NCBI GenBank assembly: GCA_964106645.2
Contig: OZ067038.1
DNA from: Podarcis pityusensis
Lineage: Eukaryota
Length of the DNA: 64,000 nt
Strand: one strand, 5' to 3'
Shown piece after piece: positions 19,134-63,223 of the stretch. The position numbers and the translations under genes are program-made. Positions within the stretch are counted from its first letter, which is position 1. Each line of letters begins with the position of its first letter. The notes beneath the pieces are model-generated. The model saw only the letters and a program-made list of their open reading frames with translations. It was not told the DNA's origin and searched no databases.

Positions 19134-19445
<312 letters not shown>

Positions 19446-20991: not shown

Positions 20992-21261
<270 letters not shown>

Positions 21262-21828: not shown

Positions 21829-21972
<144 letters not shown>

Positions 21973-22897: not shown

Positions 22898-23205
22898 CAG
22901 GGGTGCCCAAACTTTTTTCAAAGAGGACCAGATTTGATGTGAAGGCCGACCAAGTGTGAGGGCCGACCAAAGTTGTTGAGCTTTTTTGTGAATTGAAATT
23001 GAAATTGAAATGAAATTGTATTGAAATTGAATTTTTTGTGTGAAATGAAATTGAATTGAAATTACAATTTTACCCCAAAGTTCTTAAGCTTTTTTGAGGA
23101 TTGAAGTTTACCCCAAAGTTGTTGAGATTTTTCTTGGATTTTACCCCAGGGCATTTGCTGCCATGGGGGCTGGATTAAATCGACTGGCAGGCTGGATTAG
23201 ACCGC
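22898..23205. mobile_element. hAT-like MITE remnant with internal (GAAATT)n microsatellite
   Basis: caggggtgcccaaac start is typical of hAT TIRs; hexamer repeats at ~22990-23065. Confidence 0.45.
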
Positions 23206-25085: not shown

Positions 25086-25317
25086 AGATCGAATGAGAAC
25101 CTCTGTCAATGTTGTGGGAGATTCCTTTGGAGCTGGCATTGTCTATCACCTCTCCAAGGCAGAGTTGGAAAACATTGATGCCCATCACAAAGGACATGAA
25201 GATATTGAAATGACCAAGACACAGTCCATTTATGATGACATGAAAAACCACAGGGAAAACAACTCAAACCAGTGTGTTTATACAGCCCACAACTCTGTCA
25301 TAATAGATGAGTGCAAG
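25086..25317 (+). CDS. SLC1A2: SLC1A2 exon 10 (232 nt)
   Basis: tgcag|...|gtacct; [24 protein letters not shown]...[10 protein letters not shown]. Confidence 0.97.
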
Positions 25318-25356
25318 GTACCTTTCACATTTATGGATATTGAGACTTGCATCTAG
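25318..25356 (+). CDS. SLC1A2: GLT-1b/EAAT2b alternative C-terminus (exon 10 read-through)
   Basis: Reads [12 protein letters not shown]; the rodent GLT-1b tail is PFPFLDIETCI. Confidence 0.9.
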
Positions 25357-29121: not shown

Positions 29122-30572
29122 GGAAGGAACAATCCGGGTCCACCTCTAATAAGCCCCAGAAGTTGTCTTGTGGTAAAAGCTGGTATCAAGATTCAAGAAG
29201 ATTTTTCACTGTCTTCATTTAGTATAAAAACTATTCGCTTATTTAATGCTCTTAACGGAAACTTAGAAACAGTCTCATAAAGTCATTGCTCCTTTAGCAT
29301 CTTTGCCAAATAATTCATAACCATGTCTCTCAATTGTGTCACCATTTGAATGGATGTGGCTGAAGGACACCCTGTCAGTTCAAGAGATGTATTTTTGCTG
29401 GGCTTCCTCTGTTCAACTCAAGACGTAGAGAATGTAGATGCTGCAAAAGAGGAAAGATCAGAAAGCCCCAATGGCTGGTGAGACTCTGGCTAATAAGCAT
29501 TAAGTATAATGTAAAAGGTGCAGTCTTTTGCAATGCCTCTTCTCCTGCTGTAGATGTCAACCAGCACCTTGGTGCATATCAAATACAGTTAGCACTGTGG
29601 ACTGTAATATATGATCACTGTAAATGTTTTATATGTGCTTTATTAATACGTGGCATATGATATTCTCAGTTCCCTATTATTCATGCCATCCTCACATCGA
29701 TGGTCATATCCCAGTTCTTTTAACCATCCAGAGCCCCATGCATGCCAGATCCCAGGGGATATCATCATTTTTGTCACCCAAAACTTGAAGGTATAGGAAA
29801 AATGATTTGCAGTTTAGAGTGGTGGATGGGTGTGAATGCCTGTGTGCATGGTCCCCAAAAATGAATTAACCCCTGGGCAGCATGTATACATGGCTTGACC
29901 ATGATTTTTTCTCCAATTGAGTTCAATCGACTGTATTGCCAGTATATAAATTTAGGTGTGAAATATGTACTTTTCAGAGCTAATAAACCATCCCAGATTG
30001 TATACTATTCATACTAGCAACTAGCACAATTCTGATTATCCATACAAGGAGAAACATAGACTGCAATATGTGACTGTCTCAATCCAGCAACGTCAAAGTA
30101 CCATATAGATGCATATCACTGGTATTTCAGCAGGAAAATCTGCAGCAAGTAATATCTTGTCACCCTTTCGCTGAGACCTGGGATGGAACAAGTTGCTATT
30201 CTTTAGGGATAAAATGTCTGCAAATAAATCACATCTTTTGCATTCATTTTGCTAAAAACAAACTTAGCAAGTTTAATATTGTTTAACAGCTGGAAGCTAT
30301 TTATACACTGGAGAAAATGTTTTATATGTTTGGTCCTTGTGAACAGAGAACTGAAACGTAAGATATGGTAATAATCTTGTCAGTTATATCTTGGTTTGTA
30401 CAAATGGGTTTGGGTAAAGAATATCCATTCAGAATTGTAACAGAATTATATTTAGTAGTTGTTGTGATGCCCAAACTGCAATAATTCCTTGACAACCCAT
30501 CATAAAAGGACACACTGCCACAGCAAATATCTGTAAGTTGGAGCAGGAAAGATTTAATCTCTTGTTGACAGA

Positions 30573-41789: not shown

Positions 41790-41997
41790 TTACACGCCAC
41801 TCTTCAAGGCCACTTCTTGTTGGTTCTGCGTTTCATCAATTGCCTGGAATTCATCTGTTTGGTTTTCTGGCTTCTCATCATGCACCAAATGAACCATTTC
41901 CCGAGATCTACTGGCTTCTCCATTCAATCCACCCTTGTTTTTCTCATTTATGCCTCCTTTGCCATTGTTGATAATAAGTTTTTGCTTCTGCCCACAT
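41790..41997 (-). CDS. CD44: CD44 last exon, long cytoplasmic tail
   Basis: tag|(R)CGQKQKLIINNGKG...GLNGEASRSREMVHLV...DETQNQQEVALKSGV*; matches the CD44 ICD (RCGQKKKLVIN...KIGV). Confidence 0.95.
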
Positions 41998-43328: not shown

Positions 43329-43407
43329 CTCCTTCGACTGTTCACAGCAATGCAAACACCAAGTATCAATGCCAGTGCCAAGAGAGAAGCAACTACAATA
43401 AGCCAAT
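43329..43407 (-). CDS. CD44: CD44 transmembrane exon (79 nt)
   Basis: cag|(D)[25 protein letters not shown]|gtaagg. Confidence 0.96.
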
Positions 43408-44522: not shown

Positions 44523-44622
44523 ACCTAGAGACTCACCACTTCCAGTGGTGGCAGTGAGAGGAGCAATCACAAACCAATAGGACGTTATAATAAACATAAA
44601 TGGTAAAAGTAAAGACACCAAC

Positions 44623-44721
44623 CTGGTATGATAGCCATTCGTGGCTCGCTTTTTGGCGATTCCCCTGTCTGGTCAATGTGTGTCCCTCTTCCGGACCCCT
44701 TCGGGTCATTTGGGTTATCAC
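44623..44721 (-). CDS. CD44: CD44 juxtamembrane constant exon (99 nt)
   Basis: ctag|(G)DNPNDPKGSGRGTHIDQTGESPKSEPRMAIIP|gttggt; the end resembles human ...PIRTPQIP; phase 1-1. Confidence 0.85.
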
Positions 44722-45616
44722 CTAGATAAAAAACAAACAAACATGCATTACTCACAAAACATTAGAGCTGTGTTATATAAATCTGGAGCCCTTGAGTTTT
44801 CACAAACAAAAAAAATACATGATATTGTCAAAGGAAACACAGGTGCGTTGAGTTTCATAACAAGGCCCTATTCCTTGTCACGGGAATGGTAAAGTACAAG
44901 GATACAGCAGTGCTTAAGCTCCATATAAACCATAGTTTCCTCAGAGCTTTCATTTGGGTTTCTCCCTATCACACCTTGTTTGCCAACCATTTCAAAAAGC
45001 CTTCTTTTGTAAAATACTGGCAGGCTATGCTAAGGAAAGGGAATTTTCATTACTCTATGAAAATTAAAATCAGTTTTCCAAACCATGATAAAATGCTTTC
45101 TTCTTTTAAATTTCCAGCTAGTTTATATTTATTGTATTCTTTAGCCCTGTATTTTGAGTTCTTCTGTGAAGTGTATCCCTGTAGCAAGCAGGGTGAAACT
45201 GCCTTTCCATAACACCACATACACTTATCAAATGCATGCAAACACTGCAGACGTTAGCTAATATTGCTATGTGTAATTGTTTGTAGTGATACTTATAGAA
45301 ATATGTATTAATCTGTTATAATTTGAAAATAGTTCCCATAAGTGAGAAAAGGGAGAAAAATCAACTAATCTCCAAAACTGGAGAGACAGAAAGATTGTTG
45401 AGAAATGATCACACAACTTCCTTCGACTAGTGCAAACGCATTCATTAAAATCAGAGTTTGATCATGCATCTTTGCAAGAAGTCATGAAATAAACAGAATG
45501 TAATCACAGTGAGATTTCCATCTAAAAGCTATTTGTTTCCACACCACATTTCCCCAGGATTTTGATGTATGGAAAAGTAAAGGTTAGCTGAAGTTCCTGG
45601 AATTTATAACTCTTAC

Positions 45617-45802
45617 TGGCAGTAGGCGATGATGGATGTCTGTCAGAACCACTGTCAATTTCAGGAAAAACTCCAGGTAATACATAATCTTGAGTGCCAT
45701 TTACAAGAGGCTCATCTTCAGTGCTCCATTCAGGACGCAATCCATGTAACTGTGGATCTTGTGTTGATTCTTCAGTTTTGGTTCCATCCTTTGAGACTAC
45801 TG
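45617..45802 (-). CDS. CD44: CD44 repeat cassette exon R11 (186 nt)
   Basis: acaacag|AVVSKDGTKTEESTQDPQLHGLRPEWSTEDEPLVNGTQDYVLPGVFPEIDSGSDRHPSSPTA|gtaaga. Confidence 0.8.
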
Positions 45803-47281
45803 CTGTTGTAATGATGGTTGAATTAACTATTAACTATCAATTAACCTTGAAATTTGCAGAATTAAAACCGGTTTGTTTTTTTGTTTTACAAAATTCCTAC
45901 TATACTGAAAGTTTAAAAAGAACAAAATAGGGAAGGTTGCAATGTTTCTGATCTGCTCATGAAACCTTCCAGTAGTAATGGACAGAGACTCAAGTGATCA
46001 ACAGCCAGAAGCAGCTCAGATCAAAGTAACATTGGATCCAAGGACCATTTGGCAAAAGATGCCACATTAGAGTGTGCATACACATGGAAATATTGTCTAA
46101 TAATAAAATTCATGCATGGCTCCTGCTAGCAAGCCCATTAACCCACACCACGCTTGGGAAGTAAGGTGTTGTCATTTCCTTCCCTTTTTCAAAACTTAAA
46201 CAAACCCACTGGCTCAAATTCTGTCCGATTTTTATCTCTACAGAGATAAATATTCAAGAAATGTAAAGCACACCAGCAGTTTGGAAAGCCCAAGAATATG
46301 CCAGGAACAACAAAGTGAAATGAATAATCAATATATCAGTTCTTACTACAGATATTAGGAGATGCTCTAATTGTCTACCTAAAAAGAAACACTAGCCACT
46401 GAAACTAGGAAGGAAACGAGTCTCTAAAGTACACCAAAAACTTCAACACACTGCCATGTTTAAGCAAGGATCCTGCAAAACTTTACATCTTGGCATTAAT
46501 ACTGACATAAAGACAGCATTTAAAGACATCACTAGGCTCTCAAGTAGGAGATGTAACAGCAGACAGCATAATAGATACATTTTGTGAAGGATCATTAGCT
46601 TCACATGATAGCAAAATGACATAATTGAAACAATAAATGCAAATATTTGCAGACCGGAATAGAGAAATCATGACCTAAATTGTTTTAGAAAATTATTCCC
46701 CTGTACATATCATACTCTCCCGCCCCCCCCCCCCGCCCCCGCAAAAAACAACAACATATGTTTGGGAAACAGTCAATTTGATCACAACTCAAAATGCAAT
46801 ACTCCTTCAACAAATTTACGTTGTGTAAACCTGCAGTGCCTGGCAAACAGACAAGTACTTCTCACAATCTTGGTGGCTATCAAAATGGTCATGGCTATCA
46901 CAATCACATGTGCTCCATTAGCCACAATTAAAGAATATTAAGCAAGGAATTTTGACAGGGAAATTTCAAAACTGAAGTTCAAAGATATGGAAATGTCATT
47001 AGGCTGCAACTGCTTACAAATGATTTTATGACATTATTTTATGAGGTGATCTCCACATGGCACAGTCCCCAAGTAGCAACTTCAACACATTCATTTTACC
47101 AATAAGGTCCTGGCCAAGGTAACAATTTAGTTTCTGTTCCTCGACCTTATATAAGTTCAGGTTACATGCAATTTAATTTTCGGTGTCTGTTTTAAAATAG
47201 ACATGAAAATTAACAACATGAGATTATCTCACCTAAGATAGACAGGGTTAAAAGGAATCCCACCACCATTCTACTGAATAC

Positions 47282-47428
47282 CTGTATGATCAGTATTATT
47301 TTTTTGACTTATTCCTCTTCGAGGAACAATTCCAGGAACTAAGACATCTGCTGTTGATTTCGTCGTGTATTTGTCTTCATGACCCCATTGCCTCACTGGT
47401 TCTGGGGTTGAATCTTCTTTGGCCACAT
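47282..47428 (-). CDS. CD44: CD44 repeat cassette exon R10 (147 nt)
   Basis: catag|DVAKEDSTPEPVRQWGHEDKYTTKSTADVLVPGIVPRRGISQKNNTDHT|gtattc; not in the ORF track. Confidence 0.72.
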
Positions 47429-48578
47429 CTATGGCAATGGTAAATGAATTGAGATTGTAAAAATAGCAAAACTATTAGCTGCTTTTCACTCTGATCCACT
47501 GACTTCTTACTCTACCAGCAGAATATTTCTATCCAAACAACATGCTGGGATGCCAGATTTGCTACAATTCAGAAATTCCAAAAGACTTTGACAGTGATCT
47601 GGCTGCCCCCTTGGTTTTATTTTCTGACCCAACATCTGACATCACCAGCTGACACTGACAGCTGATTAGGCATACAGAAAATTTCATCAACTTGACAATG
47701 ACATTTGTGTTATATACTTTTGATGGAAGAGAAAACTATTCATGAGCTACAGCCAAGTACTTGTCAGTTGTGGATGAGAGCCCACGTTCTTCAACCTTCT
47801 GCTCTCTACTCACCACTCCCTTTCTCACACACTCATTTCAACTCTTCTACAGGTTTTAACATGGGCTAATTTTATTATAAATCATGTCATAATTAAATGA
47901 TCATCACAGCAAACATCATTATTTGACTCTGGGTGATTGGCATATGCAAATAATAATCATAATGAATGAGATATAAAGAATTAAAATGTAAGACTTAGTT
48001 TCAGAACCATATTTGTATATCTTGTTTGTTTATGTTCTACAAGCTCTACACATGATCAGAAATTTAAACCAAAGGACATTATGCCCTACAGACTAGCTTG
48101 AGAACAAAACAAAACATCAGCATAGAAATATCTGGTCAGGTACTATCAAGTTCTTGTGTCGTGGAATGAATGCTATTGTCTATATTGCCAGGCCTGTTTT
48201 TTCTGGAGCCTGCTATATAAACTTGATGGGAGGAACATCTCCTTTAATTGGGGTTTGCATAAAATCAACTCTTAGAACAGGAGTTGTTCCTTATTATTAT
48301 TAAGGAACAGCAAGCTTGCCTCTAGTGAGAGAACTTTTAATTCTAATTTTCAGAAGGCTATGCCTCAGTACAATTTATGCCCTAATCCCTATTTTGAACA
48401 AATCACTTGTCCTTGTCATGTATCATTGCCTAAAAATATCCCCATAGGGCACTTTCAACTCTCAGAGGCTAGAGCTAACATTCAAAAGTTACAGATAGGT
48501 AGCCGTGTTGGTCTGCCATAGTCAAAATAAAAAAAATCCTTCCAGTAGCACCTTTAAGACCAACTAAGTTAGTTCTTG

Positions 48579-48616
48579 GTATGAGCTTTCGTGTGCAAGC
48601 ACACTTCTTCAGATAC
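48579..48616 (-). ncRNA. Minimal type I hammerhead ribozyme motif (inverted copy, sense to CD44)
   Basis: Exact reverse complement of 49555-49592. Confidence 0.6.
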
Positions 48617-49554
48617 ACTGAAACAGAAGTTGCCAGATCCTTCTATATAGTGAGAAGGTGGGGAGGGGTATTACTCAGACAGGTGGTGGGAATGGGAGAT
48701 TGGCAGATAGCTGGGATGAGCCTGCTGACGACTCTTAACGACTGTAATGGGTCTTACAGGAAAAGGCAAGGGGTGAGAAGGTGAGAAATGGCTTAGTCAT
48801 GTATAATGGGATAAGAATCCAATGTCTTTGTTCAAACCAGGTTTCTCCATGGTTTCCCATTGCCTACAGACAGCCACCCAATCTTAAACAACTCCTAACC
48901 CACAATAATACTACAACCAGACTTAACACGGACACTGGCACCAGAGCCTGCAATAAACCCAGATGCCAACTTTGCTGCCACATACACCCGGACAACACCA
49001 TTACTGGCCCCAACAACATCACACATACCATCTCGGGACTATTCAATTGCTCATCATCTAACATTGTGTATGGCATCAAATGCCAACAGTGTCCTTCAGC
49101 TCTCTATATTGGACAAACAGGCCAAACCTTACGCCAAAGAATAAATGGACATAAATCTGACATCAAGAATCACAAAACAGAGAAACCAGTAGGAGAACAC
49201 TTTAATCTCCCAGGACATTCTATACAAGATCTCAAAGTAGCTGTTTTACTACAAAGGAATTTCAGAAATAGACTGGAAAGAGAAGCTGCTGAATTGCAAC
49301 TCATTACCAAACTTAAAACCATGGAGAAACCTGGTTTGAACAAAGACATTGGATTCTTATCCCATTATACATGACTAAGCCATTTCTCACCTTCTCACCC
49401 CTTGCCTTTTCCTGTAAGACCCATTACAGTCGTTAAGAGTCGTCAGCAGGCTCATCCCAGCTATCTGCCAATCTCCCATTCCCACCACCCTTCTGAGTAA
49501 TACCCCTCCCCACCTTCTCACTATATAGAAGGATCTGGCAACTTCTGTTTCAGT

Positions 49555-49592
49555 GTATCTGAAGAAGTGTGCTTGCACACGAAAGCTCATAC
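49555..49592 (+). ncRNA. Minimal type I hammerhead ribozyme motif in the Penelope pLTR
   Basis: GTAT-CTGAAGA-A-GTGTG(cttg)CACAC-GAAA-GC-TC-ATAC: stem I, CUGANGA core, stem II, GAAA, palindromic mini stem III, UC site. Confidence 0.65.
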
Positions 49593-49918
49593 CAAGAACT
49601 AACTTAGTTGGTCTTAAAGGTGCTACTGGAAGGATTTTTTTTATTCAAAAGTTAAAATCAGAGGATTTCCTAAAGCATGAGACATCAATCCCAAAGAATC
49701 AGTCCCTCTCAAATTGCCCGAAAACAGCAACCTTATGTTAAAAGGAACAAATAATATTCTTAGGTTAGAATTCCAACCTTAAAATCTAGACATTAATCAA
49801 CATTTCCATTTGGTGGAAAGGCGGGGTACAGATTTAAAGAACGACAAATGCTTTGTTTCAAAAACAGTGCTTCATTTCATACATTGTGATGAAATGAATA
49901 GATTATTCAGCGCAATAC

Positions 49919-50071
49919 CTGTTTGTTTGCTTTCACTATCTGAATCAACTCCCATCGGTATACCATCTCTAGAAGTATTTGTGGGATATATTTCTTCAGC
50001 ATCCCAGCCTGGCTGATGAATGGGAGGTAATGGTTGTTGAGTTGAGTCTTCATGATCGTTGTGTATGACAG
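49919..50071 (-). CDS. CD44: CD44 repeat cassette exon R9 (153 nt)
   Basis: aaacag|AVIHNDHEDSTQQPLPPIHQPGWDAEEIYPTNTSRDGIPMGVDSDSESKQT|gtattg. Confidence 0.78.
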
Positions 50072-50331
50072 CTGTTTGGTGAATCAATGATGAACTTAGG
50101 TTTGGACGTGTTAAAATACAAAATGATGGTTTTTGCAAGCCACTCCCCTCCCAATAACTCACTGCGCAATGTTCTCAGCTTTACTCATATTTACATGCAA
50201 TTACATTTCTTGTGCACCTTACATGTTCAACTATATTTACTGACTGAAAATAAGAATCCAGTTGTGAGCAATGTGATTCCCCACACCATCACCAATCACC
50301 ACATAATTAAGAATGGATCTGCCACAACTAC

Positions 50332-50511
50332 CTGTATGATAGAAATTATCTATGTTATTGTTTCCAGCTGGAGGAATAACTTCTATGGGTACTTCATCCT
50401 TCGTGCTGTTTGTAGAATAATCATCTTCTCTACCCGATTCATGATGTATATCATGTACCGTTGGATCACGAGTAGCAACTTCATGTTTGATATCATCACT
50501 GGAACCCACAG
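50332..50511 (-). CDS. CD44: CD44 repeat cassette exon R8 (180 nt)
   Basis: catag|AVGSSDDIKHEVATRDPTVHDIHHESGREDDYSTNSTKDEVPIEVIPPAGNNNIDNFYHT|gtagtt. Confidence 0.78.
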
Positions 50512-50936
50512 CTATGATAATGATGGTTGGGTTGGGTTAATGTTAAGTGTTCTGTAACATTTGCAGAACTACATCCCACATGATTTGCTTAGCATCGCAT
50601 TTAATTTTTTTAAATTAGTATTGCTAATGGATATCCATTACCACATTTTAGTGGATCTCAATGCAAATTTAGTTTCCTTACAAACCAGGACACAAAAGGA
50701 ATATAATTCATTTGGAATATATCAACAGAATGAAAAAACAAAAACAAAACAAAAATGCACACTTCCTCTTTATAGTTACATGAAATGTTTTCTTTTTATT
50801 CTAACTTTCTGATAGAGGAATACTACTAAGTAGCAAGTTATCTCTAGATATTTGCAGTGTATTTTATTGTTACTTAAAAGCTTTACTGTGTGCATGAATG
50901 AAAAATGGATGTTCAAGGCTTATCCCATAACTATAG

Positions 50937-51290
50937 GTAAAGGTAAAGGGACCCCTGACCATTAGGTCTAGTTGTGGCCGACTCTGGGGTTGCGGCGCTC
51001 ATCTCGCTTTATCAGCCGAGGGAGCCGGCATACAGCTTCTGGGTCATGTGGCCAGCATGACTAAGCCACTTCTGGCGAACCAGAGCAGCGCACGGAAACG
51101 CCATTTACCTTCCCGCCAGAGCGGTACCAATTTATCTACTTGCACTTTGATGTGCTTTCGAACTGCTAGGTTGGCAGGAGCATGGACCGAGCAACAGGAG
51201 CTCACCCCATCGCGGGGATTCAAACTACCAACCTTCTGATCGGCAAGCCCTAGGCTCTGTGGTTTAACCCACAGCACCACCCGCGTCCCA
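50937..51290 (-). mobile_element. Sauria SINE (Squam1)
   Basis: Reverse complement of 4277-4625; (ACCTTT)n tail; TSD taactatag at 50928-50936 and 51294-51302. Confidence 0.9.
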
Positions 51291-51443
51291 CCTTAACTAT
51301 AGACCACTGCTATTCCAATGATGCTGGAATCAAGTTTAAATATTATGATTGCATGGCCAGTTCTCATATCAATTACAGACCATTGTGCCATATCATGACA
51401 CGAGTATCTTCCTTGTTTTGTTTAATGTCAATGAATTTCTATA

Positions 51444-51623
51444 CAGTGGTACTTCGGGTTACAGACTCCACTAACCCAGAAGTAGTACCTCGGGTTAAGA
51501 ACTTTGCCCCAGGATGAGAACAGAAATTGCGCACAAGCTAAGGTGGTACCTCAGGTTAAGAAAGGTTTCAGGTTAAGAACAGACCTCCGGAACGAATTAA
51601 GTTCGTAACTCGAGGTACCACTG
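51444..51623. mobile_element. Tc1/mariner (Tigger/pogo-like) MITE
   Basis: TIRs cagtggtac / gtaccactg with TA TSD. Confidence 0.85.
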
Positions 51624-51737
51624 TAATTGATTTCAGTAAGATTAAAATTGCAACCTGTTATCTAGCTCAATACAGCAGCCTAATTCATCTAGAACGTAAC
51701 AAAGAGAATATCTGAATTTTCTTCTTCTTGCTTGTAC

Positions 51738-51902
51738 CTATATGTGAAGTTTCATTTCCATGCACGTATTCAACTGAAGAAATAATTCCAGGTACAAAAT
51801 AATCTGTTGACGTGTTTGAAGGATGCCTGTGTTCATTGTTCTGGCCAGGATGTGCTTCTTGAGTAGAATCTTCATGGTCACTACCACCATCAGAGACCAC
51901 AG
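51738..51902 (-). CDS. CD44: CD44 repeat cassette exon R7 (165 nt)
   Basis: gacag|AVVSDGGSDHEDSTQEAHPGQNNEHRHPSNTSTDYFVPGIISSVEYVHGNETSHI|gtacaa. Confidence 0.78.
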   Translation of the reverse strand: MWSLMVVVTMKILLKKHILARTMNTGILQTRQQIILYLELFLQLNTCMEMKLHI

Positions 51903-52009
51903 CTGTCACAATATAGTTAGATCATTCATTCATTCATTTATTACAATGCTTATGTAATCTATTACGAAATTGTTTACTGAGAGGCACATTACCTGGCCTT
52001 CTACTGCAC

Positions 52010-52250
52010 ATAGATTCAAGTTACAAGAAAGGAGATTCCAGCTAAACATTAGGAAGAACTTTCTGACAATAGGAGTAGCCTAACAGTGGAACGGACTCCC
52101 TTAGTAGGTGAGGGACTCTCCTTCACTGGAGGTTTTTAAGCAGAGATTAGATGGTCAACTGTTGTGGAAACTTTTGTTGAGATTCCTGCATTGCAGGGAC
52201 TTGGACCAGATGGCCTTTGGGGGTCCCCTCCAACTCTATAATTCTATGGT
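52010..52250 (+). mobile_element. CR1 LINE 3' fragment
   Basis: aggaagaactttctgac...tctccttcactggaggtttttaagcagag...ccaactctataattctatg is a typical CR1 3' end. Confidence 0.8.
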
Positions 52251-52882
52251 TATGTATTGGGAGGCTTCTGACTCTTTCTAAATAATACATATGTTAGCCC
52301 ATCAGCATCCCTAAAGGGCATGTTGATGGCAGAATTTCCTTCAAAAGATTTCAATGAAACAGATTAGTTTAACATAAAAAAAAAATTGTATCTCTACAAG
52401 ACTATTCATGTACAGTTTTGTTTTGTTTTTGTAACTTGGAGGCGTAATGCCAAGTAGCCCTTCAGCCCTAGATTTATTTGTATTTTACCTGTCCTTACTA
52501 CTCCACCACTAAATTACTCCATTCATCTGACAGATGCTAAGTCAGTGGTCATTGTCATCCCTGAAAGTCGCAGTTATGGCAATTTATTTCTGTACTTTCT
52601 GCATTTATACACCCACCTTCTCACAGTGACTCATAAAAAACACACACCTGGGTTTGAAGGCTAAGTATGGAGAGTCGTCTCCTGTAATTACTGACTCTGC
52701 TTTTAAGTGGGTTATGAACACCATTATTTTGTTGCAAATGAATGGAACTTTATTATCAACTGGCAGAGAGAATGAGAGTAGTTGGGATAGCTCTTCAAAT
52801 GGAGTACGGTGACAATGCAGTACATTTGAAAAATAATACAAAGAACTGCAAATTTATTAAAGTTCTATTTCCTGGGAGGTAC

Positions 52883-53056
52883 CTGTATGATGCGTCTCCT
52901 TTTCATGCTTTCCTTCACTTGAAAGAATAATTATAGGTGGGATATTATCCACAGTTGTGTTTGTGGTATCTTCATCTTCACTTTCCCACCCAGGATGCAT
53001 TGCATGTGGTTTTTGTGTGGTGTCTTCCTGCTTGCCATTATCACTGGAGGCAACAG
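52883..53056 (-). CDS. CD44: CD44 repeat cassette exon R6 (174 nt)
   Basis: acaacag|AVASSDNGKQEDTTQKPHAMHPGWESEDEDTTNTTVDNIPPIIILSSEGKHEKETHHT|gtacct. Confidence 0.78.
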
Positions 53057-53536
53057 CTGTTGTAATGATGGTTTGAATATTTTTCAAATGTTACATAGGT
53101 ATCGTTCTTTTCATCAGTTCTTACTAAGTGCTATGTTTTGTTGAATTGAATCAATATCGTATTAGGTTTTTAAGTATAATTACATTTAGTCTGATGGCAT
53201 TTACCTACTATGATTTACAGTTCAAGTACCTTTCATCCAACACCAGAAGAATTAAAAGCCATTAGAATTCCTGTACTTGGAAGACACCCAAGGAGATGTT
53301 TCCATTTCAAGACTGCTTCAACTTGGAAGAGTTATTTCAGGCAGGAGATAATCTCAAGCAGCAAACAAATTTTGCATACTTTTTCATCACACCATGCTTC
53401 CTGTGTTTAGTGAAAGTCCATTTATTTAAATGGAGTCAGGATTACATCTTTACATAGTTTGAGATAGATTCTAATTTATCTAGAGAGATTACTGAAAAAA
53501 GAAGTAAAATGTTTTTACTATTTTTCCAGTCAATAC

Positions 53537-53716
53537 CTGTGTCTGAACGTTCATTTTCATGCTCACTTTCAGCTGCATGAAGAATTCCAGGCAGCAAATG
53601 ATTTCCAGATGTGTTTGTGAGATGTTTTTCTTCATTATCCTGTCCAGAATGCTCACTGTGCAACATTGTATCCTGACCGGAATCTTCATAGTCAGTGCTA
53701 TCACTGGAGACTACTG
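53537..53716 (-). CDS. CD44: CD44 repeat cassette exon R5 (180 nt)
   Basis: taacag|AVVSSDSTDYEDSGQDTMLHSEHSGQDNEEKHLTNTSGNHLLPGILHAAESEHENERSDT|gtattg. Confidence 0.78.
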
Positions 53717-53899
53717 CTGTTACAAAGATGGCTGGGTCAGTTTTGAATTCTCTGCTTTCACATGCGCTTCACTAAGTGCAATTCTACTTAACCCTAACAT
53801 GGAAAGTGGAAATCAGTAACCACAATAGCCGTTTTAGATGAGACAGAACTATAGCTCTATCCAAAACGTATTCTATAGCTATAAAATCTACACAGAAAA

Positions 53900-54243
53900 C
53901 AGGGCCAGTATACCTGAATGAGCGTCTCCACCCCCATCGTTCTGCCCGGACACTGAGGTCCAGCGCCGAGGGCCTTCTGGCGGTTCTCTCGCTGCGAGAA
54001 GCAAAGTTACAGGGAACCAGGCAGAGGGCCTTCTCAGTAGTGGCACGCGCCCTGTGGAATGCCCTCCCACCAGATGTCAAAGAACAAACAACTATCTGAC
54101 GTTTAGAAGGCATCAGAAGGCAGCCCTGTTTAGGGACGTTTTTAATGACTGATGTTTTAATGTATTTTTAATCTTTTGTTGGATGCCACCCAGAGTGGCT
54201 GGGGAAACACAACCAGATGGGGGGTTATTATTATTATTATTAT
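53900..54243 (+). mobile_element. L2-clade LINE 3' fragment
   Basis: Same family as the 3' end of 2530-4207; (TTA)n tail. Confidence 0.85.
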
Positions 54244-54290
54244 TTCTAATTTAGCTAAAAGATTTAATGATAATGAATCACTGCCTGTAC

Positions 54291-54430
54291 CTGTATGTGG
54301 CATTTCCTTTTTACTCGCTTTTTATTCTGAGGAATGATTCTAGGTGGCTAATTAAATTTAGATGCATTTGCAAGGTATTTATTGTCACTGTCCCAGCCAA
54401 GATCATATAGAACCATCTCTGCTTCATGAA
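54291..54430 (-). pseudogene. Decayed CD44 repeat exon (3' part)
   Basis: LYDLGWDSDNKYLANASKFN*PPRIIP, then a frameshift to ...PHT|gtacag. Confidence 0.6.
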
Positions 54431-54619
54431 TCTTTTGAAGCCTCTTGTCTGAGAAAGCAAATCTTTCCACCATAGGACTTATTTTGCCGGACTCTGGAGT
54501 ATTTATAAATACTTGTCCAGATCAAGTCAACATAGGCCTTTGGTCATCAACCTCAATGGAAGACTAAAGTAACCCAGTCTAAAAAAAGAAAAGGCAAGAA
54601 TAGGTGGGTTTTTTAAAAA

Positions 54620-54738
54620 AAACCTTTTCATGTTTTTTTTCCTATAGCTGCAATAAATTTGCCTTCACTGCCCAAGAGGATATAAACTAGCCTACATGTG
54701 TGAATCATGAGAAGAATCTTTGTAGTTCATTCCAACAG
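54620..54738 (-). pseudogene. Decayed CD44 repeat exon (5' part)
   Basis: attattatagcag|AVGMNYKDSSHDSHM*; family acceptor retained, donor not evident. Confidence 0.45.
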
Positions 54739-55415
54739 CTGCTATAATAATGTCTGAATCTGTTTTAAAGACAACAAATGGTAGCGAATGGTAGCCTGAT
54801 AAAGAATAGACCCATTAAAATCAGTGGACTGGAATAACATGAATCCATTCATTTCAGTGGATCAGCTCTTGATTTAGTTAGACAATACCCTATGTTAGCA
54901 GTTTCCTCCTCATAATTATTTGATGCCCATCTTATCTAGCTTTACGGGCACTATCAGAATTTTAGGGGAAGTCAATTAAAATATTAGGTTAAGGCTTAAG
55001 CAATATTAATTATTAGGTTAAGACTGAACTCCATATGCATTGTCAAAGTAATAAATTCCATCTGGGGAAATAATAACCTACAATCTAACATGCCACATTT
55101 CTCAAATTCTTTTCCCAAAGAAGCATGCATGGCTTCATCTTTAAGAGGACTTCAACCCAAGAAGACTTCAAAAACATTTATGTTTTGCTTAGAAATTTAC
55201 TGATGTGCTATGCAAGCTTGCTACTATTTTCTTGTGGATTTGGGGTTTTCTAAATTGTTTTTAAATTTATTGTTTGATCTTGAGTTTACATATTTGTCAG
55301 TCATCTTGTGGAAGTTTTGTCGTTGTTGTTTTGAAAGGTGACTATACATTTATTAAATGAATTTAAAAGTGTAGAAAAGTTTAACAATGCCGAATTTTCT
55401 TTTTCTTCCTAGTAC

Positions 55416-55599
55416 CCGAATGAGATATTTCCAAATCCTCTTCATGCTTGTTTACACTTGAAATGAGACCAGGCATAATTCCATTTTTAGATGTTTTTGT
55501 AGGATATCAATTTTCATTGCTCCCACCAAGATGGATCTCATTAATCTATATACCATGATTATCAGTCTTCACGGTTAATCTTACCCGTGGAGACCACAA
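55416..55599 (-). pseudogene. Decayed full-length CD44 repeat exon (184 nt)
   Basis: gtagcag|VVSTGKINRED* ... HLGGSNEN*YPTKTSKNGIMPGLISSVNKHEEDLEISHS|gtacta; stops plus a frameshift. Confidence 0.7.
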
Positions 55600-55794
55600 C
55601 TGCTACAATGATGACTGAATCAATACCACATTTTCACTATCAGGCCCATGTTATGCAGATTAAATAATTTTCTTAGGATGTATCAGTAGTTAAGGCTGCA
55701 ATCCTGATTCATGCTGACTTCATAGGAGTCAGGATTACACCCTTCGTAGGAAATAATAATGATTGGGGCTGAATAGAACTTTTCTGAGATATAC

Positions 55795-55962
55795 CTGTAT
55801 AAATGGATTCATTTTTTTGCTCATTTTCACTTGGATGAATAATTTCAGGTAGTGTCTCTTTGCTGGATGAGTTTGTGGGGTATCTTTCTTCATTGGACCA
55901 TTCAGGATATATGCCATGAGATGGTGGGCCTTGAGTGGATTCTTCAACTTTCATCCCATTAT
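55795..55962 (-). CDS. CD44: CD44 repeat cassette exon R4 (168 nt)
   Basis: aagcag|DNGMKVEESTQGPPSHGIYPEWSNEERYPTNSSSKETLPEIIHPSENEQKNESIYT|gtatat. Confidence 0.72.
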
Positions 55963-57350
55963 CTGCTTTTGTGGTGAAGTATTTGTTAATTTAATATATG
56001 CAGAACCACTGTCTATTGTACATGTATCTTGCAGTTCAATATGAATCCAACTACACTGGTGGCACGCAAGAAAAAAGGGTGCCTTTTAGGGGTCTGATTA
56101 TCTGTCACTAAGTCAAGATTCTCTATTACACTTTTAGTATAAGCACTTTTCAATAAAAAATAACCAGATCATATTTCAGTTAATTCATTTTAGTTAAATC
56201 CTTTGAAACAATATCTTATCTAGCCATTATTATGTACATGTGAAGCAAGCATTTTGTATTCCACAGCTATAAAATGATTTTGGTTTTAGTTAAATGGTAT
56301 GAAGACAACATATTTTGTTCATTTCTTATTTGCAGACAGCTAGGTTTCTAAAAAAAGAAAAGAAATAAGCTTGCAAAGGAGGTATTTTGACTTCCTCATA
56401 GACACATGCTGTTTATGGCACAATTACCAAGTATTTGTAAAAACAAATTTGTTCTTTCAATGTTGTGACGGCAAAGCAGGCAACAGAAATACAAATTAGT
56501 AAATACTGTAGATAATTTTGGTTATCTACAGTAAATGTGGAGTATTTTCTACTTGAAGAAATGCTAAAACAACAGTAATGGGCTGCATCTACACAACAGA
56601 GGCCCAAGCAAAATAATTGTGTGTAAAGCACTCTGACACTAATATTCTTGGTGTCAGAGATTGAATTATATTGGGGTGGTGGTGTCAAGATGAAATAAAA
56701 CTAATATGATATGAAGCCCTACTCAGATGATGAAATGTGACTTATCTGTTTGAATGGAATAGTGGCTCTTCTCAAAGCTACCTCTTTTTAAAACTTAGGT
56801 GCCTCTGATGCAAAAGAACATGGGTCCACCATTCTTTAACACTGACTGAGGTAGCAGGACAGAGAAATGTGCGTAGGATCCTGCAGAAGGGATGGCGCCA
56901 TTTGGAGGTTGGGCCTCCATGGACTGGCGGTGATGCCATCCATTATTGGGAATGCTAACAATCCATTATTAATGGAAGGTTTTCTCAGACTACCATGATT
57001 ATCTTAGTGCCCTAATACTGGAATACTAGGAATTCACTTTAAAGGGTAGTAAGAAGGCCAAAATATATGTGAGATGCAGGTCTGTGAATGTAGCTGCTGT
57101 GTAAGGGGCAGGGGAACTGGATCAGAACCGTGACATAGGAGGGGCTGCTGCTTTCCTCCTGTGCAATTACCACAATAAAAATTGCTTCCGTTTTTGAAGC
57201 CATGTTTCACCCCAAATGGAGAAGCGTCAGACCACAGTTCTAATAAAGGCTGGACTTCTCGCTGAGACATAAAAGCCTTCCTATTCGCTGACATAAAAGA
57301 GAAATAGAACTGAACATAGGAAGATTACATTAACATCCTGCAGGCAGTAC

Positions 57351-57524
57351 CTGTCTGAGAAGATTCATTGTCATGAAGCTTCTCACTTTGAGGAATAAGT
57401 GTTTCTAGGACACCAAGGATCGTTCTGTTTGTGGCAGAACCACTTCTCCGCCCAGCTTTGCCCACTGTGGATAACTGATCTTGATGTGATTCTTCACGTT
57501 CAGCACTTTCATTGAAGGCTAGAA
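57351..57524 (-). CDS. CD44: CD44 repeat cassette exon R3 (174 nt)
   Basis: acaatag|VLAFNESAEREESHQDQLSTVGKAGRRSGSATNRTILGVLETLIPQSEKLHDNESSQT|gtactg. Confidence 0.7.
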
Positions 57525-57809
57525 CTATTGTAGCAATGATAAATAATGCAGGAATCAGTAACTCAGTATTTTTGATTTCCGTGTGTTTAGTAGATAGTGA
57601 GAGACTCAGAAAGTTCTGTGCGTGAACTCCAGTGGAAACAGGCTTCCCCAATTGTTTCGCCATAGGATGGAAACCTTATTTATGCATGTAGAATCGCCAC
57701 CTCAACAGAAGTCAATAGGGAAGCCCATTCTGCCTGTCAGAATTCTCACCTCAACAAGGAGTCACTGTACTGAGGTGGTTATTTGAATCAGTATAGTTCA
57801 AACCTTCCA

Positions 57810-58001
57810 TGGGGAAGAAGCTTGACTCAGTGGCAGAGAATTGGCTTTGCATGCAGAAGGGTTCAATCTCTAGCATCTCCACACAGGACTGGGAAAGACT
57901 CTGTCTGAAACTTGGCAGAGCTGCTGCTAGTCAGTGTAGACTGTCCATCTTGAGCTAGATGGACCAGTGGCGTGACTAAGTATAAGGCAGCTTCCTATGT
58001 T
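57810..58001 (+). mobile_element. Squam3-like tRNA-derived SINE
   Basis: ctcagtggcagag...gggttcaatc head; gagctagatggacc...aggcagcttcctatgt tail. Confidence 0.7.
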
Positions 58002-58762
58002 TGAGATGGCATGCTAATCACTAGTTAGTGCAAGAAGAGGTATAATTTTATCATTTTATATAATTTTTCTTTCTGTGTGGAAATGGATAGAATGACTAAT
58101 GCACAAACCAATTCGGCCAAAATGCTTGGATGAAAATTCAGTCTTCTTACAGAATCAGCTACTTCCACTGAGTTCAGTAGGCTTACATCAGCTTAAACCC
58201 AGATTCTTCAATTTGCATACTGTAGCAATAAGTCTGGCAACCAATACAACTCAAGCTGCTGCATTGCCACAACAGGGATAACACAGAGATAACTTCAGAA
58301 TAACCAAACAGCAAAGTGGTCTTGATTTATACCTCTGTGTTCTCACACACGGCACATCCTTAATATTCAGTCAAACCACTGGCCCATCAAGCCCAGTACA
58401 GTCTACTTTTAGATATTTATATAGGTTTACTAGCAAATGGTATAAACATAAATTTTATCGGTATTACATATCTGGGGTACTTTTGACACTGATAATAGAT
58501 TGTACCTATCTATTTAAAATGTAACTAAAAATAATGGGAGAAAAATGACTGCGAAGAGCAAAACTCTCAACAATTTGGAACTCACATCTCTAATATATGG
58601 AAGAATAACGAAAGGAAACTCACAACGCCCACCAACCCCTTGACTAAAAGTTCTAATTTTAAGTATGGTTAAACACCATTTCTCCAGAAACCTGGATCAG
58701 GAAATGAAAGCAAACAATCCAAATGAAAATCTAATTCTACAGTTCACTATTGCTTCTGATAC

Positions 58763-58951
58763 CTGTATGGTGGGAAGATTCTTCCTCCAGAGTTCTTTCT
58801 CTTTCACTTGATGGAACAAGCACAGGATGCAATACGTCTGAAGCTGTGGTTGTAGGTAATGTGTCTTCAGTTTCTAATCCAGAGAGAGCACCATCTAGTT
58901 GAGTCTGAGTTGAGTCTTCCTGCTTGAAGAAATCATCACTGGAGGACCCAG
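58763..58951 (-). CDS. CD44: CD44 repeat cassette exon R2 (189 nt)
   Basis: ataacag|AGSSSDDFFKQEDSTQTQLDGALSGLETEDTLPTTTASDVLHPVLVPSSERERTLEEESSHHT|gtatca. Confidence 0.78.
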
Positions 58952-60649
58952 CTGTTATGATGATGTTTTGAATCAGTTGCAGTGTTATGCTTGCTGAACA
59001 ACCATCCAGATTGTTCACTTTATCTTGTTAAACTAGACATGGCTTGCTTTTTCAATTATGTGCATAAGCAAGAGGAGGAGGAAAGTAGATAATTTTTTTG
59101 GAAAGTATTGTTGAATTCACAGCCACCCAGTGTCATCACCTCGATTATCAGAAGTTGCTGATTTTCCAGACAGTGCCCCAGAGACCAGTAGGAATAGTGG
59201 AAAGGCGTGTAACAGTATTATAGGCAGAAAAGATGTGACAACAGCTTGCACCTTTAACTGATCTATCAAACGTCTTTGATAGATGCCAAGGCTTTGTACA
59301 ACTGAAATCACAGCACCATCTTAAGTCCATAAACTTTCTCTTTCTTGTCTTCTTTTTCTTCTTCCTTTTTCATTGAAATTGTACTTTTTGGAATATGTTT
59401 AGACATTTGTTCCAGGCACTAAGGCCAAATGCTGCAGCTAAATAATGTTGGTTCACACATTCAACTTGAAAAAAATATTTTGGCTGGCATTCTGAGCCAG
59501 ATGTAGTTCAACCATTTCAGCATAGCCTTATACAGTTCTAAAGGTGCTGCTGTTTAAATCCAAGGAAAGCGTCAGAAGCATCTTGAGGTACCACCACCAC
59601 ACCACCAGATTTTTCCTTCAGAGTCAAACCTTTTCCCAGCATTCAGCAGGAAGCATAATGTGTTGAACATTATGATGACTGCCTGAGATGAGCCCAAGAG
59701 AACATGCTTTAGATTTTGAGAAATAACACCAAGCCCACAGAAAGCCCTATGGAATAGGAAAGCAAGGTAGACCCCATCTGCAAGAGAAAATGCTAATACA
59801 TTTCCATAATAAACCAAACCAAAATTGCAATGCAAGTTGCATATGTGTTTGTATAAATGCCATTTATTCATTTTTCATTCCCTAATATTGCAATCGTCCT
59901 CTAATGTTGGCGAATCTATGCCCTTGGGTTCAAAAGATCTCTGTTTTCATGCGTTTGAATAGCAGTTTATATAGTTCTTTCTTTAAAACAAAGTGAAGCA
60001 TCACAAAATGAGCTCATGTTAGCTCCCAACTTTCTAAACAAGGAACTGATTTGAGCCAATTTTGTGAAGTCTACAAGCACTGGCTACTTGAAAAACACAG
60101 CGGCAACTTGATTTGGTATGGGCCAATCTCATCATGTTTCTATACTGACTTTTACTGGCTGCGTGTCTGATCTATGTGTACTTTAGCACTGCCAAACTTC
60201 CTTTGTGTAGCACTGAACTGAGGCCAACGTGGTTACATATGACAGCACTTTAAAAAATACTGCTTTAAGATATGGTTAGACAGGGATGACATGTTGGTTT
60301 GGAACTTCTGCAAATTTCAGGGAACTTTGCAGTCTAAAATAAATTCAGATTTGGGATTTGTGACTCACTCTTGCTTAGTCAAAGCCAAATAACACGTGAG
60401 CTTTTGGTTTCATGGTTTTGTTAAGATTTAACAGAACACATCTGGGGGGAAATGCCTTCAAATATGTGGCTCTGCTTTCTTTTTTTAAAGTAATCACAGT
60501 ATATTATCTGCAGATGTAGTAGCAGATATACTACAGATGTAGCACTGCACCATGATTCTAGTTATTAACTAACTTCTAGACTTTGATACTGTGAGAGTTG
60601 ATGCTGACAAGAAAGAGGTAGTGTCAAGATCATGCTTTAGTAGTCATAC

Positions 60650-60823
60650 CAGTAGCTGTTGAATAATGTTCATCATCACCTAGGGGAACAATTCGGGGTA
60701 GCACATCCTCCCTTGTGCCATTTGTTGAATATCTGACTTCACTGTCTTTTTCAGAGTGTACACCATGCAGAAATGAATCATGGGCCGAGTCATCATGCTT
60801 GACATCTTTGGTGGAGACCACAG
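60650..60823 (-). CDS. CD44: CD44 repeat cassette exon R1 (174 nt)
   Basis: acaacag|AVVSTKDVKHDDSAHDSFLHGVHSEKDSEVRYSTNGTREDVLPRIVPLGDDEHYSTAT|gtatga. Confidence 0.8.
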
Positions 60824-63043: not shown

Positions 63044-63223
63044 TGGTTTTTGATGGCCGAGGTTCGTTATCACCACTGCTGTTCCATTCAAGAACGGTTT
63101 CAGGATTTAAGTGCCCAGACCCTTCTCCATTATGATCATCATCATCATCGCTACCATCATCATCATCATCGCCACCATCATCATCATCACCAACAACATC
63201 ATGATGTTCTTCAGAACTCTTAT
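63044..63223 (-). CDS. CD44: CD44 variable-region exon with poly-Asp tract and EGSG motif (180 nt)
   Basis: actag|DKSSEEHHDVVGDDDDGGDDDDDGSDDDDDHNGEGSGHLNPETVLEWNSSGDNEPRPSKT|gtaagc; phase 1-1, open frame. Confidence 0.75.

What the first reader, a model, noticed from the sequence alone, without database searches (positions are those of the whole stretch)
45617..60823. CD44 stem built from a tandem array of at least 11 paralogous cassette exons
Seen: 11 open, AG/GT-bounded, phase 1-1 exons, all multiples of 3 (174, 189, 174, 168, 180, 174, 165, 180, 153, 147, 186 nt; 1890 nt or 630 aa in total). They share the consensus AVVS.D....EDSTQ....H.(G/E)W..E..Y.TN.(S/T).....PG......E....HT and a shared acceptor (catcattacaacag-like), while the intron interiors show no obvious similarity. 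Known: mammalian CD44 has ~10 variant exons that are not obviously homologous to one another. Inference: this lineage amplified a single exon (weak resemblance to mammalian v10) into a combinatorial cassette array. That would give a tunable-length glycosylated stalk under the hyaluronan-binding domain, possibly relevant to epidermis, shedding or regeneration.
Basis: partly seen in the sequence, partly recalled or inferred. Interest (0 to 1): 0.9.

Follow-up and report, generated by a model that had tools for sequence, protein, structure and literature searches.

The report
Repeated cassette exons in lizard CD44
The stalk of the cell-surface hyaluronan receptor CD44 in this wall lizard is encoded by 11 intact copies of one old exon that are spliced in or out. 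The same array occurs in other lizards, snakes, turtles, crocodilians and birds, so it is an old sauropsid feature that sits in public gene models but that I did not find described in any paper.

Summary
On the minus strand, 45617-60823 holds 11 open, AG/GT-bounded, phase 1-1 exons of exactly the reported lengths, all clearly paralogous. I also found two decayed copies.

The gene is CD44:
- Its transmembrane and cytoplasmic exons lie downstream.
- A convergent SLC1A-type gene lies beyond it.
- RefSeq CD44 models of Podarcis raffonei and P. muralis contain all 11 exons in order.

RNA-seq of a very close relative shows exact junctions for the four 3'-most exons and the constant exon. It also shows skipping of exon 45802-45617 and skipping of the whole array.

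The exons diverge 2.4-2.8 times more slowly than the deep intron. They encode acidic, Ser/Thr/His-rich, cysteine-free sequence with no predicted fold and a positionally conserved N-glycosylation site.

Squamates share 1:1 orthologous units, the last unit is orthologous across sauropsids, and turtles, crocodilians and birds carry arrays too.

A CAUCAU-bearing weak acceptor flank is conserved between lizard and bird units. It recalls the YB-1-dependent acceptor of human exon v5.

Homology to the mammalian v exons could not be tested.

The parts
60650..60823 (-). variable exon unit 1 (174 nt, phase 1-1)
   Evidence: AG/GT bounded and open. nhmmer E 1e-43. Present in P. raffonei and P. muralis CD44 models.
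58763..58951 (-). variable exon unit 2 (189 nt); lacks the N-x-S/T site
   Evidence: Squamate orthogroup SH-aLRT 95.
57351..57524 (-). variable exon unit 3 (174 nt), the most divergent copy
   Evidence: (E 7e-14). Skipped in some RefSeq isoforms.
55795..55962 (-). variable exon unit 4 (168 nt)
   Evidence: Orthogroup SH-aLRT 99.
55413..55618 (-). decayed unit (pseudo-exon): in-frame stops and a frameshift, acceptor flank still recognisable
   Evidence: nhmmer E 6e-19. Translation. Best match is Varanus unit 5, which has no intact Podarcis ortholog. Diverges at or above the intron rate against P. raffonei.
54287..54757 (-). second decayed unit in two pieces (54757-54650 and 54428-54287)
   Evidence: nhmmer E 6e-7 and 2e-8. 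Stops seen.
53537..53716 (-). variable exon unit 5 (180 nt)
   Evidence: Orthogroup SH-aLRT 93.
52883..53056 (-). variable exon unit 6 (174 nt)
51738..51902 (-). variable exon unit 7 (165 nt)
   Evidence: Skipped in P. raffonei isoform X13.
50332..50511 (-). variable exon unit 8 (180 nt)
   Evidence: RNA junction 50071|50332 with 58+83 reads. Orthogroup SH-aLRT 90.
49919..50071 (-). variable exon unit 9 (153 nt)
   Evidence: RNA junctions 47428|49919 (51+58 reads) and 50071|50332. Orthogroup SH-aLRT 85.
47282..47428 (-). variable exon unit 10 (147 nt)
   Evidence: RNA junctions to 45802, to 49919 and directly to constant exon 44721. Orthogroup SH-aLRT 93.
45617..45802 (-). variable exon unit 11 (186 nt), the last unit; a true cassette
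   Evidence: Included (junctions 44721|45617 with 15+39 reads, 45802|47282 with 12+18) or skipped (44721|47282 with 28+33). Groups with the last units of alligator, turtle and birds, SH-aLRT 90.
63044..63223 (-). upstream exon with poly-Asp run and EGSG, not a member of the repeat family
   Evidence: Matches P. raffonei CD44. Absent from P. muralis models and one P. raffonei model. Length differs by 6 and 21 nt between species.
44623..44721 (-). membrane-proximal constant stalk exon (99 nt), strong polypyrimidine acceptor
   Evidence: RNA depth 86-95 and junctions into the array. Boundaries.
43329..43407 (-). CD44 transmembrane exon (79 nt)
   Evidence: Hydrophobic segment followed by NSRRR. 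Loose ends from exon 44721-44623 land here.
41790..41997 (-). CD44 cytoplasmic-tail coding exon up to the stop codon
   Evidence: 69 residues 100% identical to P. raffonei and P. muralis CD44.

Best explanation
This is the variable (alternatively spliced) stalk region of the CD44 gene of a Podarcis wall lizard.

Shown:
- It consists of 11 intact and 2 decayed copies of one ancestral exon of about 170 nt in phase 1-1. Any subset can therefore be spliced in without breaking the frame.
- RNA reads and public isoform models show single-exon skipping, block skipping and skipping of the whole array.
- The array is old. Most units were already distinct in the squamate ancestor, and at least the last unit was distinct in the sauropsid ancestor. 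Later birth and death followed: decay in lacertids, and recent block duplications in ratites and a terrapin.

Inferred:
- Each unit adds about 55 residues of acidic, Ser/Thr/His-rich, cysteine-free, unfolded chain that usually carries one N-glycosylation site. The array would work as a graded spacer of up to about 630 residues between the hyaluronan-binding Link domain and the membrane, tuning the length, charge and glycan load of the stalk.
- Inclusion is probably governed by weak, purine-interrupted acceptors that carry a conserved CAUCAU element. This is the kind of site through which YB-1 activates human CD44 exon v5.
For: Exon anatomy.

Gene identity:
- Transmembrane and cytoplasmic exons.
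- 90-100% identity per exon to RefSeq CD44 of P. raffonei and P. muralis, whose longest models contain all 11 exons in order.
- Xlink domain in those proteins.
- Convergent SDF-family neighbour gene.

Expression and alternative use:
- Stranded RNA-seq junctions fall exactly at the predicted boundaries. About 35-50% of constant-exon junctions enter the array, and exon 45802-45617 is included in about 33-46% of those.
- 35 RefSeq isoform models in three lacertids skip different units.

Constraint:
- Exon divergence is 1.16% and 0.69% against 2.82% and 1.92% in deep intron (p 6e-6 and 4e-5).
- Non-synonymous rate over intron rate is about 0.4.
- All orthologous exons are open.

Age.

Disorder and glycosylation:
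- 22% Ser/Thr, 20% Asp/Glu, 0 Cys, and an N-x-S/T site at position 29-34 in 9 of 11 units.
- AlphaFold2 pLDDT 62, pTM 0.14, no secondary structure.
- No Pfam or PDB match for the unit.

Acceptor element:
- 7 of the 14 CATCAT hexamers in 15.3 kb lie within 25 nt of the 13 acceptors.
- The same element sits upstream of units in a passerine bird and, as in-frame translation, in many other assemblies.
- Human v5 precedent: PMC3458536.
Against: - RNA reads were laid only on 44560-50559, so junctions for units 1-7 rest on RefSeq models of congeners, not on reads seen here.
- The RNA runs come from a very close relative (31-mer share about 0.6), not certainly the window's own species, and the tissue is unknown.
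- Pooled dN/dS between close species is 0.7-1.5 on few counts. Constraint is shown against introns, not by dN/dS.
- Spacer function, glycosylation and YB-1 dependence are inferences; nothing here tests the protein.
- The conserved motifs (EDSTQ, GW, PG) may mean a specific ligand rather than a mere spacer.
Confidence: 0.8

Rival explanations
1. The sauropsid array and the mammalian variable exons v2-v10 are the same ancient family. One ancestral cassette exon with a CAUC-bearing weak acceptor was amplified before the amniote split, and the mammalian copies diverged beyond easy recognition.
For: - Same position in the gene, the same symmetric phase, and exon sizes that I recall as similar in mammals (recalled, not tested).
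- The array was already multi-copy in the sauropsid ancestor.
- Human v5 has a poor polypyrimidine tract with CAUC motifs that act as an intronic enhancer. This is the architecture conserved upstream of lizard and bird units.
- From memory only, not tested: several mammalian v exons contain T-Q ... W ... E ... Y/H ... T patterns.
Against: - The lizard profile found no mammalian or amphibian protein at E<=1e-3 among 1.8 billion representatives. That threshold needs about 35 bits, so weak kinship would be missed.
- No mammalian sequence could be obtained for a targeted test.
Confidence: 0.4
2. The array arose in sauropsids independently of the mammalian variable exons, by tandem duplication of an exon in the same long intron. 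In that case the two variable stalks are convergent.
For: - No mammalian hit in the profile search.
- A 2008 study found no variable exons in the chicken, frog and stickleback assemblies then available and called v3 mammal-specific.
Against: - That study predates the current assemblies. Birds clearly do have units.
- The shared acceptor architecture with human v5 is unexpected under independent origin.
Confidence: 0.4
3. One reading: a recent amplification of one exon, specific to this lizard lineage.
For: - The paralogy itself.
- Lineage-specific recent block duplications do occur elsewhere, in emu, ostrich and Malaclemys.
Against: - Paralogs within the window are only 20-44% identical, and their introns are unalignable.
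- There are 1:1 orthologs in geckos, varanids, iguanians and snakes.
- The last unit is orthologous across sauropsids.
Confidence: 0.02
4. The copies are a dispersed transposon, or are non-functional open frames picked up by gene predictors.
For: None beyond the repetition itself.
Against: - Hits occur only in this array, all on one strand.
- Every named protein hit in the public library is a CD44.
- Junction reads are exact.
- The exons are conserved above the intron level, while the two decayed copies are not.
Confidence: 0.01

Closest known systems
Mammalian CD44 variable exons v1-v10 (CD44v isoforms)
   Same: - Same gene and the same insertion point, between the Link/stem exons and the membrane-proximal constant exons.
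- Frame-neutral cassette exons of roughly 100-200 nt used combinatorially; the standard form skips all of them.
- The weak acceptor with CAUC motifs is documented for human v5.
   Different: - Here the exons are visibly copies of one unit, with profile E-values of 1e-30 to 1e-50.
- There are 11 intact copies, adding up to about 630 residues.
- No sequence match to mammalian CD44 was found at library-wide thresholds.
- No v3-type heparan-sulphate module was identified inside the array.
RefSeq and Ensembl CD44 gene models of sauropsids, for example P. raffonei XP_053243862.1, P. muralis XP_028583942.2, and isoforms of Alligator, Chelonia, Dromaius and Falco
   Same: The same exons are already joined into predicted proteins of up to 1174 aa in Podarcis and 1265 aa in Malaclemys, with many skipping isoforms.
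   Different: These are automatic models without commentary. Six full-text searches of the held library found no paper that describes the repeat nature, age, decayed copies or conserved acceptor element. Pfam has no family for the unit.
Other variable glycosylated ectodomain segments made by cassette exons, such as CD45 exons A, B and C (from general knowledge)
   Same: Alternative inclusion of unstructured, heavily glycosylated segments changes the size and charge of a leukocyte or epithelial surface receptor.
   Different: CD45 has three such exons. The CD44 array here is a long tandem family with birth-and-death turnover.
Collagen XXIII exon array noted elsewhere in this genome (scan note s1-722463)
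   Same: A tandem array of copies of one exon in a membrane protein that can be switched in or out.
   Different: A different gene and chemistry (collagen triple-helix repeats), and reported there as a lizard-specific expansion. I did not check it.

Membership tests
CD44 gene | N-terminal Link (Xlink) hyaluronan-binding domain | tested here: met
   The Link exons lie outside the window. The congener proteins that contain the window's exons at 90-100% identity carry PF00193 at E 1e-20.
CD44 gene | Single transmembrane segment followed by the conserved basic juxtamembrane motif and cytoplasmic tail | tested here: met
   Transmembrane exon 43407-43329 and tail exon 41997-41790. The tail is 100% identical to P. 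raffonei and P. muralis CD44.
CD44 gene | Tail-to-tail neighbour SLC1A2, as on human 11p13 (recalled from general knowledge) | tested here: met
   Plus-strand exons at 6-25 kb match Pfam SDF at E 1e-14 to 6e-25, convergent with CD44. Assigning them to SLC1A2 itself is an inference.
CD44 variable (v) exons | Location between the Link/stem exons and the membrane-proximal constant exon, frame-neutral | tested here: met
   The array lies between exon 63223-63044 and constant exon 44721-44623. All units are multiples of 3 in phase 1-1.
CD44 variable (v) exons | Alternative inclusion in mRNA, including a form that skips all of them | tested here: met
   Junction reads for inclusion and skipping of unit 11. 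81+72 reads join the constant exon to an exon upstream of the window. Skipping isoforms in RefSeq models. Units 1-7 were not covered by reads here.
CD44 variable (v) exons | Sequence homology to individual mammalian exons v1-v10 | tested here: inconclusive
   No mammalian hit at E<=1e-3 in the library-wide profile search. No mammalian long isoform could be retrieved for a targeted comparison (one search listed only squamates and turtles).
Tandem exon-duplication family | Significant pairwise or profile similarity among neighbouring exons of one gene, same strand and phase | tested here: met
   nhmmer E 1e-30 to 1e-50 for the 10 exons in the profile and 7e-14 for the eleventh. 20-44% protein identity to the reference unit.
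Dispersed transposon | Copies elsewhere in the genome or in unrelated genes | tested here: not met
   No copy outside 45.6-60.9 kb in the window. All named library hits are CD44.
YB-1-dependent weak 3' splice site (as in human CD44 v5) | Poor polypyrimidine tract interrupted by purines and carrying CAUC or CACC motifs | tested here: met
   45-65% pyrimidine in the last 20 nt. 7 of 11 acceptors carry CAUC/CACC and 5 of 11 carry CAUCAU. The element is conserved in a bird. The feature is described.
YB-1-dependent weak 3' splice site (as in human CD44 v5) | Binding of YB-1 and loss of inclusion when the motif is mutated | not testable with these tools
   Needs minigene and knock-down experiments.

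The most novel reading that the evidence does not exclude
All CD44 variable exons of amniotes, including mammalian v2-v10, descend from one ancestral cassette exon. Its weak, CAUCAU-bearing acceptor has been kept for about 300 million years as the regulatory handle for inclusion. Sauropsids preserve the family in recognisable form and so give the key to the origin and splicing logic of the much-studied mammalian CD44v isoforms.
Probability: 0.35. Interest if true: 0.65.

Novelty: new variant of a known kind. Interest (0 to 1): 0.5.

Why it matters
CD44 variant isoforms are among the most studied alternative-splicing products in cancer and immunology. Their evolutionary origin is nevertheless obscure, and a 2008 paper concluded that variable exons are missing outside mammals (PMC2531186).

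This locus shows that sauropsids have a large, expressed and selectively maintained variable region built from one exon family. It comes with an equally conserved intronic element at each acceptor.

That gives three things:
- a concrete model for how the CD44 variable region arose, namely tandem exon duplication followed by birth and death;
- a natural series of stalk lengths for testing what the variable region does;
- a testable link to the YB-1/CAUC mechanism worked out on human v5.

It is not a new kind of system, and the exons already sit unremarked in public gene models.

Tried and rejected
- Motif searches for the cytoplasmic tail with human-like patterns failed at first. The tail was found by listing open frames.
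- The profile of the unit found nothing in the PDB. Pfam has no family for the unit.
- I tried to obtain mammalian CD44 long isoforms through the Link-domain search. The 120 rows shown were all squamates and turtles, so mammalian homology was left untested.
- Screaton 1992 (PMC50718) is not held.
- Six literature searches found no description of sauropsid CD44 repeats or of CD44 exon duplication.
- Genomic DNA of Varanus, Heteronotia, Sceloporus and Pangshura CD44 could not be fetched, because the product was not on record or the gene range was too long.
- dN/dS between Podarcis species rests on too few changes to be informative. I used exon-versus-intron rates instead.
- Rejected: the transposon, artefact and recent-amplification readings (see rival explanations).
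Exons were searched one by one by reference, and full-length comparisons used public protein ids.

Full report
**1. The observation**

The gene runs on the minus strand.
Their coordinates are 60823-60650, 58951-58763, 57524-57351, 55962-55795, 53716-53537, 53056-52883, 51902-51738, 50511-50332, 50071-49919, 47428-47282 and 45802-45617.
- Each has an AG acceptor, a GT donor and an open frame. The first two bases complete a codon and the last base opens the next one, which is phase 1-1.
- A DNA profile built from ten of the exons (all but 57524-57351) finds those ten at E 1e-30 to 1e-50 and the eleventh, which was not in the profile, at E 7e-14. All hits are on one strand and nowhere else in the 64 kb.
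One is 55618-55413, with stops and a frameshift. The other is a unit split into 54757-54650 and 54428-54287.
- Protein identity to the reference unit is 20-44%, with shared motifs EDSTQ, GW, Y-x-T-N-x-T and PG.
- About 25 nt upstream of each acceptor is also shared. The intron interiors show no similarity to each other.

**2. The gene**

- Downstream on the same strand lie a 99-nt stalk exon (44721-44623), a 79-nt transmembrane exon (43407-43329) and the cytoplasmic-tail exon (41997-41790).
- A profile of the 11 units was searched against 1.8 billion representative proteins. It returned 47 hits. All 13 long ones that I looked up are annotated or clustered as CD44. They come from Podarcis raffonei, Salvator, Gekko, Vipera, Alligator, two turtles, emu, ostrich, falcon, goose and ground tit.
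- P. raffonei isoforms X1 and X2 and P. muralis isoforms X1 and X4 contain all 11 exons in window order, at 86-100% identity in tblastn alignments that overrun the exon ends. They have an Xlink domain at the N-terminus.
- The window is 96.3% identical in DNA to the P. raffonei locus and 97.3% identical to the P. muralis locus. It therefore comes from a closely related Podarcis.
- Plus-strand exons at 6-25 kb belong to the sodium:dicarboxylate symporter family and converge on CD44. From general knowledge, this is the arrangement of SLC1A2 and CD44 in human.

**3. Expression and splicing**

- Two stranded RNA-seq runs were laid on 44560-50559. They come from a very close relative, whose runs hold about 0.6 of the window's 31-mers.
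- They give canonical junctions on the gene strand exactly at the predicted boundaries:

| Junction | Reads (X23 + X24) |
|---|---|
| 44721\|45617 | 15 + 39 |
| 45802\|47282 | 12 + 18 |
| 47428\|49919 | 51 + 58 |
| 50071\|50332 | 58 + 83 |
| 44721\|47282 (skips the last unit) | 28 + 33 |

- A further 81+72 reads join the constant exon to an exon that lies upstream of the window in the P. raffonei protein. That form skips the whole array.
- Roughly 35-50% of constant-exon junctions enter the array. Unit 11 is included in about 33-46% of those.
- Contigs of two older runs carry the same junctions.
- Units 1-7 were not covered. Their use rests on 35 RefSeq isoform models of three lacertids, which skip single units or blocks in many combinations.

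**4. Selection**

- Against P. raffonei and P. muralis, the 11 exons differ at 1.16% and 0.69% of sites. Deep intron differs at 2.82% and 1.92% (Fisher p 6e-6 and 4e-5). Splice-site flanks are conserved as well.
- The decayed copies diverge at 5.7% against P. raffonei.
- The non-synonymous rate is about 0.4 of the intron rate.
- All orthologous exons are open in both species. dN/dS itself rests on too few changes to use.

**5. What the units encode**

- The 619 residues are 22% Ser/Thr, 20% Asp/Glu, 6.6% His and 6.6% Pro. There is no cysteine, and only 23% is hydrophobic.
- Nine of the eleven units carry an N-x-S/T site at position 29-34.
- AlphaFold2, run with a 64-sequence alignment of units, gives pLDDT 62, pTM 0.14 and no secondary structure.
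- The inference is an extended, glycan-bearing, acidic spacer whose length is set by splicing. This step is inferred, not shown.

**6. Age and turnover**

- Best matches between Podarcis units and those of Varanus, Anolis, Python and Gekko are colinear. They score far above second-best matches and above within-species paralogs.
- A maximum-likelihood tree of 87 units recovers one-per-species squamate groups. SH-aLRT is 85-99 for units 2, 4, 5, 8, 9, 10 and 11.
- The last unit forms a clade (SH-aLRT 90) with the last units of alligator, green turtle, goose and falcon, and with the last emu unit and its recent copies.
- The array was therefore already differentiated before the squamate radiation, and at least partly before the sauropsid split.
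- Turnover continues. Emu, ostrich and Malaclemys show runs of identical scores that indicate recent block duplications.
- Lacertids have lost at least one unit. The decayed copy at 55618-55413 best matches Varanus unit 5, whose group has no intact Podarcis member.
- Two exons upstream of the window in P. raffonei give only marginal matches to the profile, E 0.006 and 0.03.

**7. The acceptor element**

- The last 20 nt of each intron are only 45-65% pyrimidine. Their consensus is close to TCAAcCATCATTAcAACAG. The constant exon has a long T-rich tract instead.
- Seven of the 14 CATCAT hexamers on the gene strand in 15.3 kb fall within 25 nt of the 13 acceptors.
- In the ground tit locus, five of the seven listed unit hits (one duplicated pair among them) are preceded by CCATCAT or ACATCAT and an ACAG or GCAG acceptor.
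- Open frames that read through the acceptor in many other assemblies translate to the corresponding I-I/F/V-T-A pattern.
- An intronic element kept across paralogs and across the lizard-bird split, while the rest of the intron is unalignable, is most simply a splicing signal.
- In human CD44, exon v5 has a very poor polypyrimidine tract interrupted by purines. Its CAUC motifs bind YB-1 and are required for inclusion (PMC3458536).
- I propose the same mechanism here as an inference.

**8. Comparison with what is known**

- Functionally this is the CD44v system: the same gene, the same position and the same frame-neutral cassette logic.
- It differs in that the exons are evident copies of one unit, and in the number of copies.
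- A 2008 paper reported a lack of variable exons in the bird, frog and fish assemblies then available (PMC2531186). Current models clearly contain them.
- I found no paper describing the repeat family.
- Whether mammalian v exons belong to the family is open. The library-wide search found none at E<=1e-3, which is a harsh threshold. I could not bring a mammalian long isoform into the session.

**9. Procedure notes**

Exons were given one by one by reference.
- The window contains no N runs.

**10. Verdict**

The feature is real, expressed and conserved, but it is ancient and widespread in sauropsids and is already present in automatic gene models. It is a new variant of a known kind, of moderate interest.

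Noticed in passing
window 48492-49642: A young insertion inside the intron between units 10 and 9. It has a 197-aa open frame with a GIY-YIG domain (Pfam E 3.7e-5), flanked by inverted copies of a 67-aa frame, and looks like a fragment of a Penelope-like retroelement. It is absent from the P. raffonei and P. muralis loci and from RNA contigs of the related species. It is covered at very high depth on both strands, so it belongs to a multi-copy, transcribed family.
   Followed up: partly
window 6100-25400, + strand: Exons of a sodium:dicarboxylate symporter (EAAT/SLC1A-type) gene converge on CD44, matching the SLC1A2-CD44 neighbourhood recalled from human 11p13.
   Followed up: partly
window 63044-63223, - strand: The poly-Asp/EGSG exon differs in length by 6 nt from P. 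raffonei and by 21 nt from P. muralis. It is absent from all P. muralis isoform models and from P. raffonei X16, so it is itself a variable, length-polymorphic cassette outside the repeat family.
   Followed up: partly
window 53784-54113 (-) and 2718-3077 (+): Two open frames on opposite strands share a long, nearly identical peptide stretch. This is a dispersed repeat of unknown type, with no Pfam match. One copy lies in the CD44 intron next to the split decayed unit.
   Followed up: no
P0008 (emu), P0009 (ostrich), P0169 (Malaclemys terrapin): Runs of units with identical profile scores indicate very recent tandem duplications of two-unit blocks in ratites and four-unit blocks in the terrapin. 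Copy number in these species may be polymorphic, or may be inflated by assembly.
   Followed up: no
L003:28662-28787 and 30419-30544 (ground tit): Two identical divergent units about 1.76 kb apart, rich in Asp/Glu/Ser and preceded by the CAUCAU acceptor flank. This is either a recent duplication or an assembly duplicate in the bird locus.
   Followed up: no
L001 (P. raffonei), protein P0177 residues 216-247 and 284-339: Two variable exons upstream of the window give marginal matches to the unit profile (E 0.006 and 0.03), including an STQ ... W ... E ... N-x-T pattern. They may be older, more diverged members of the same family.
   Followed up: partly
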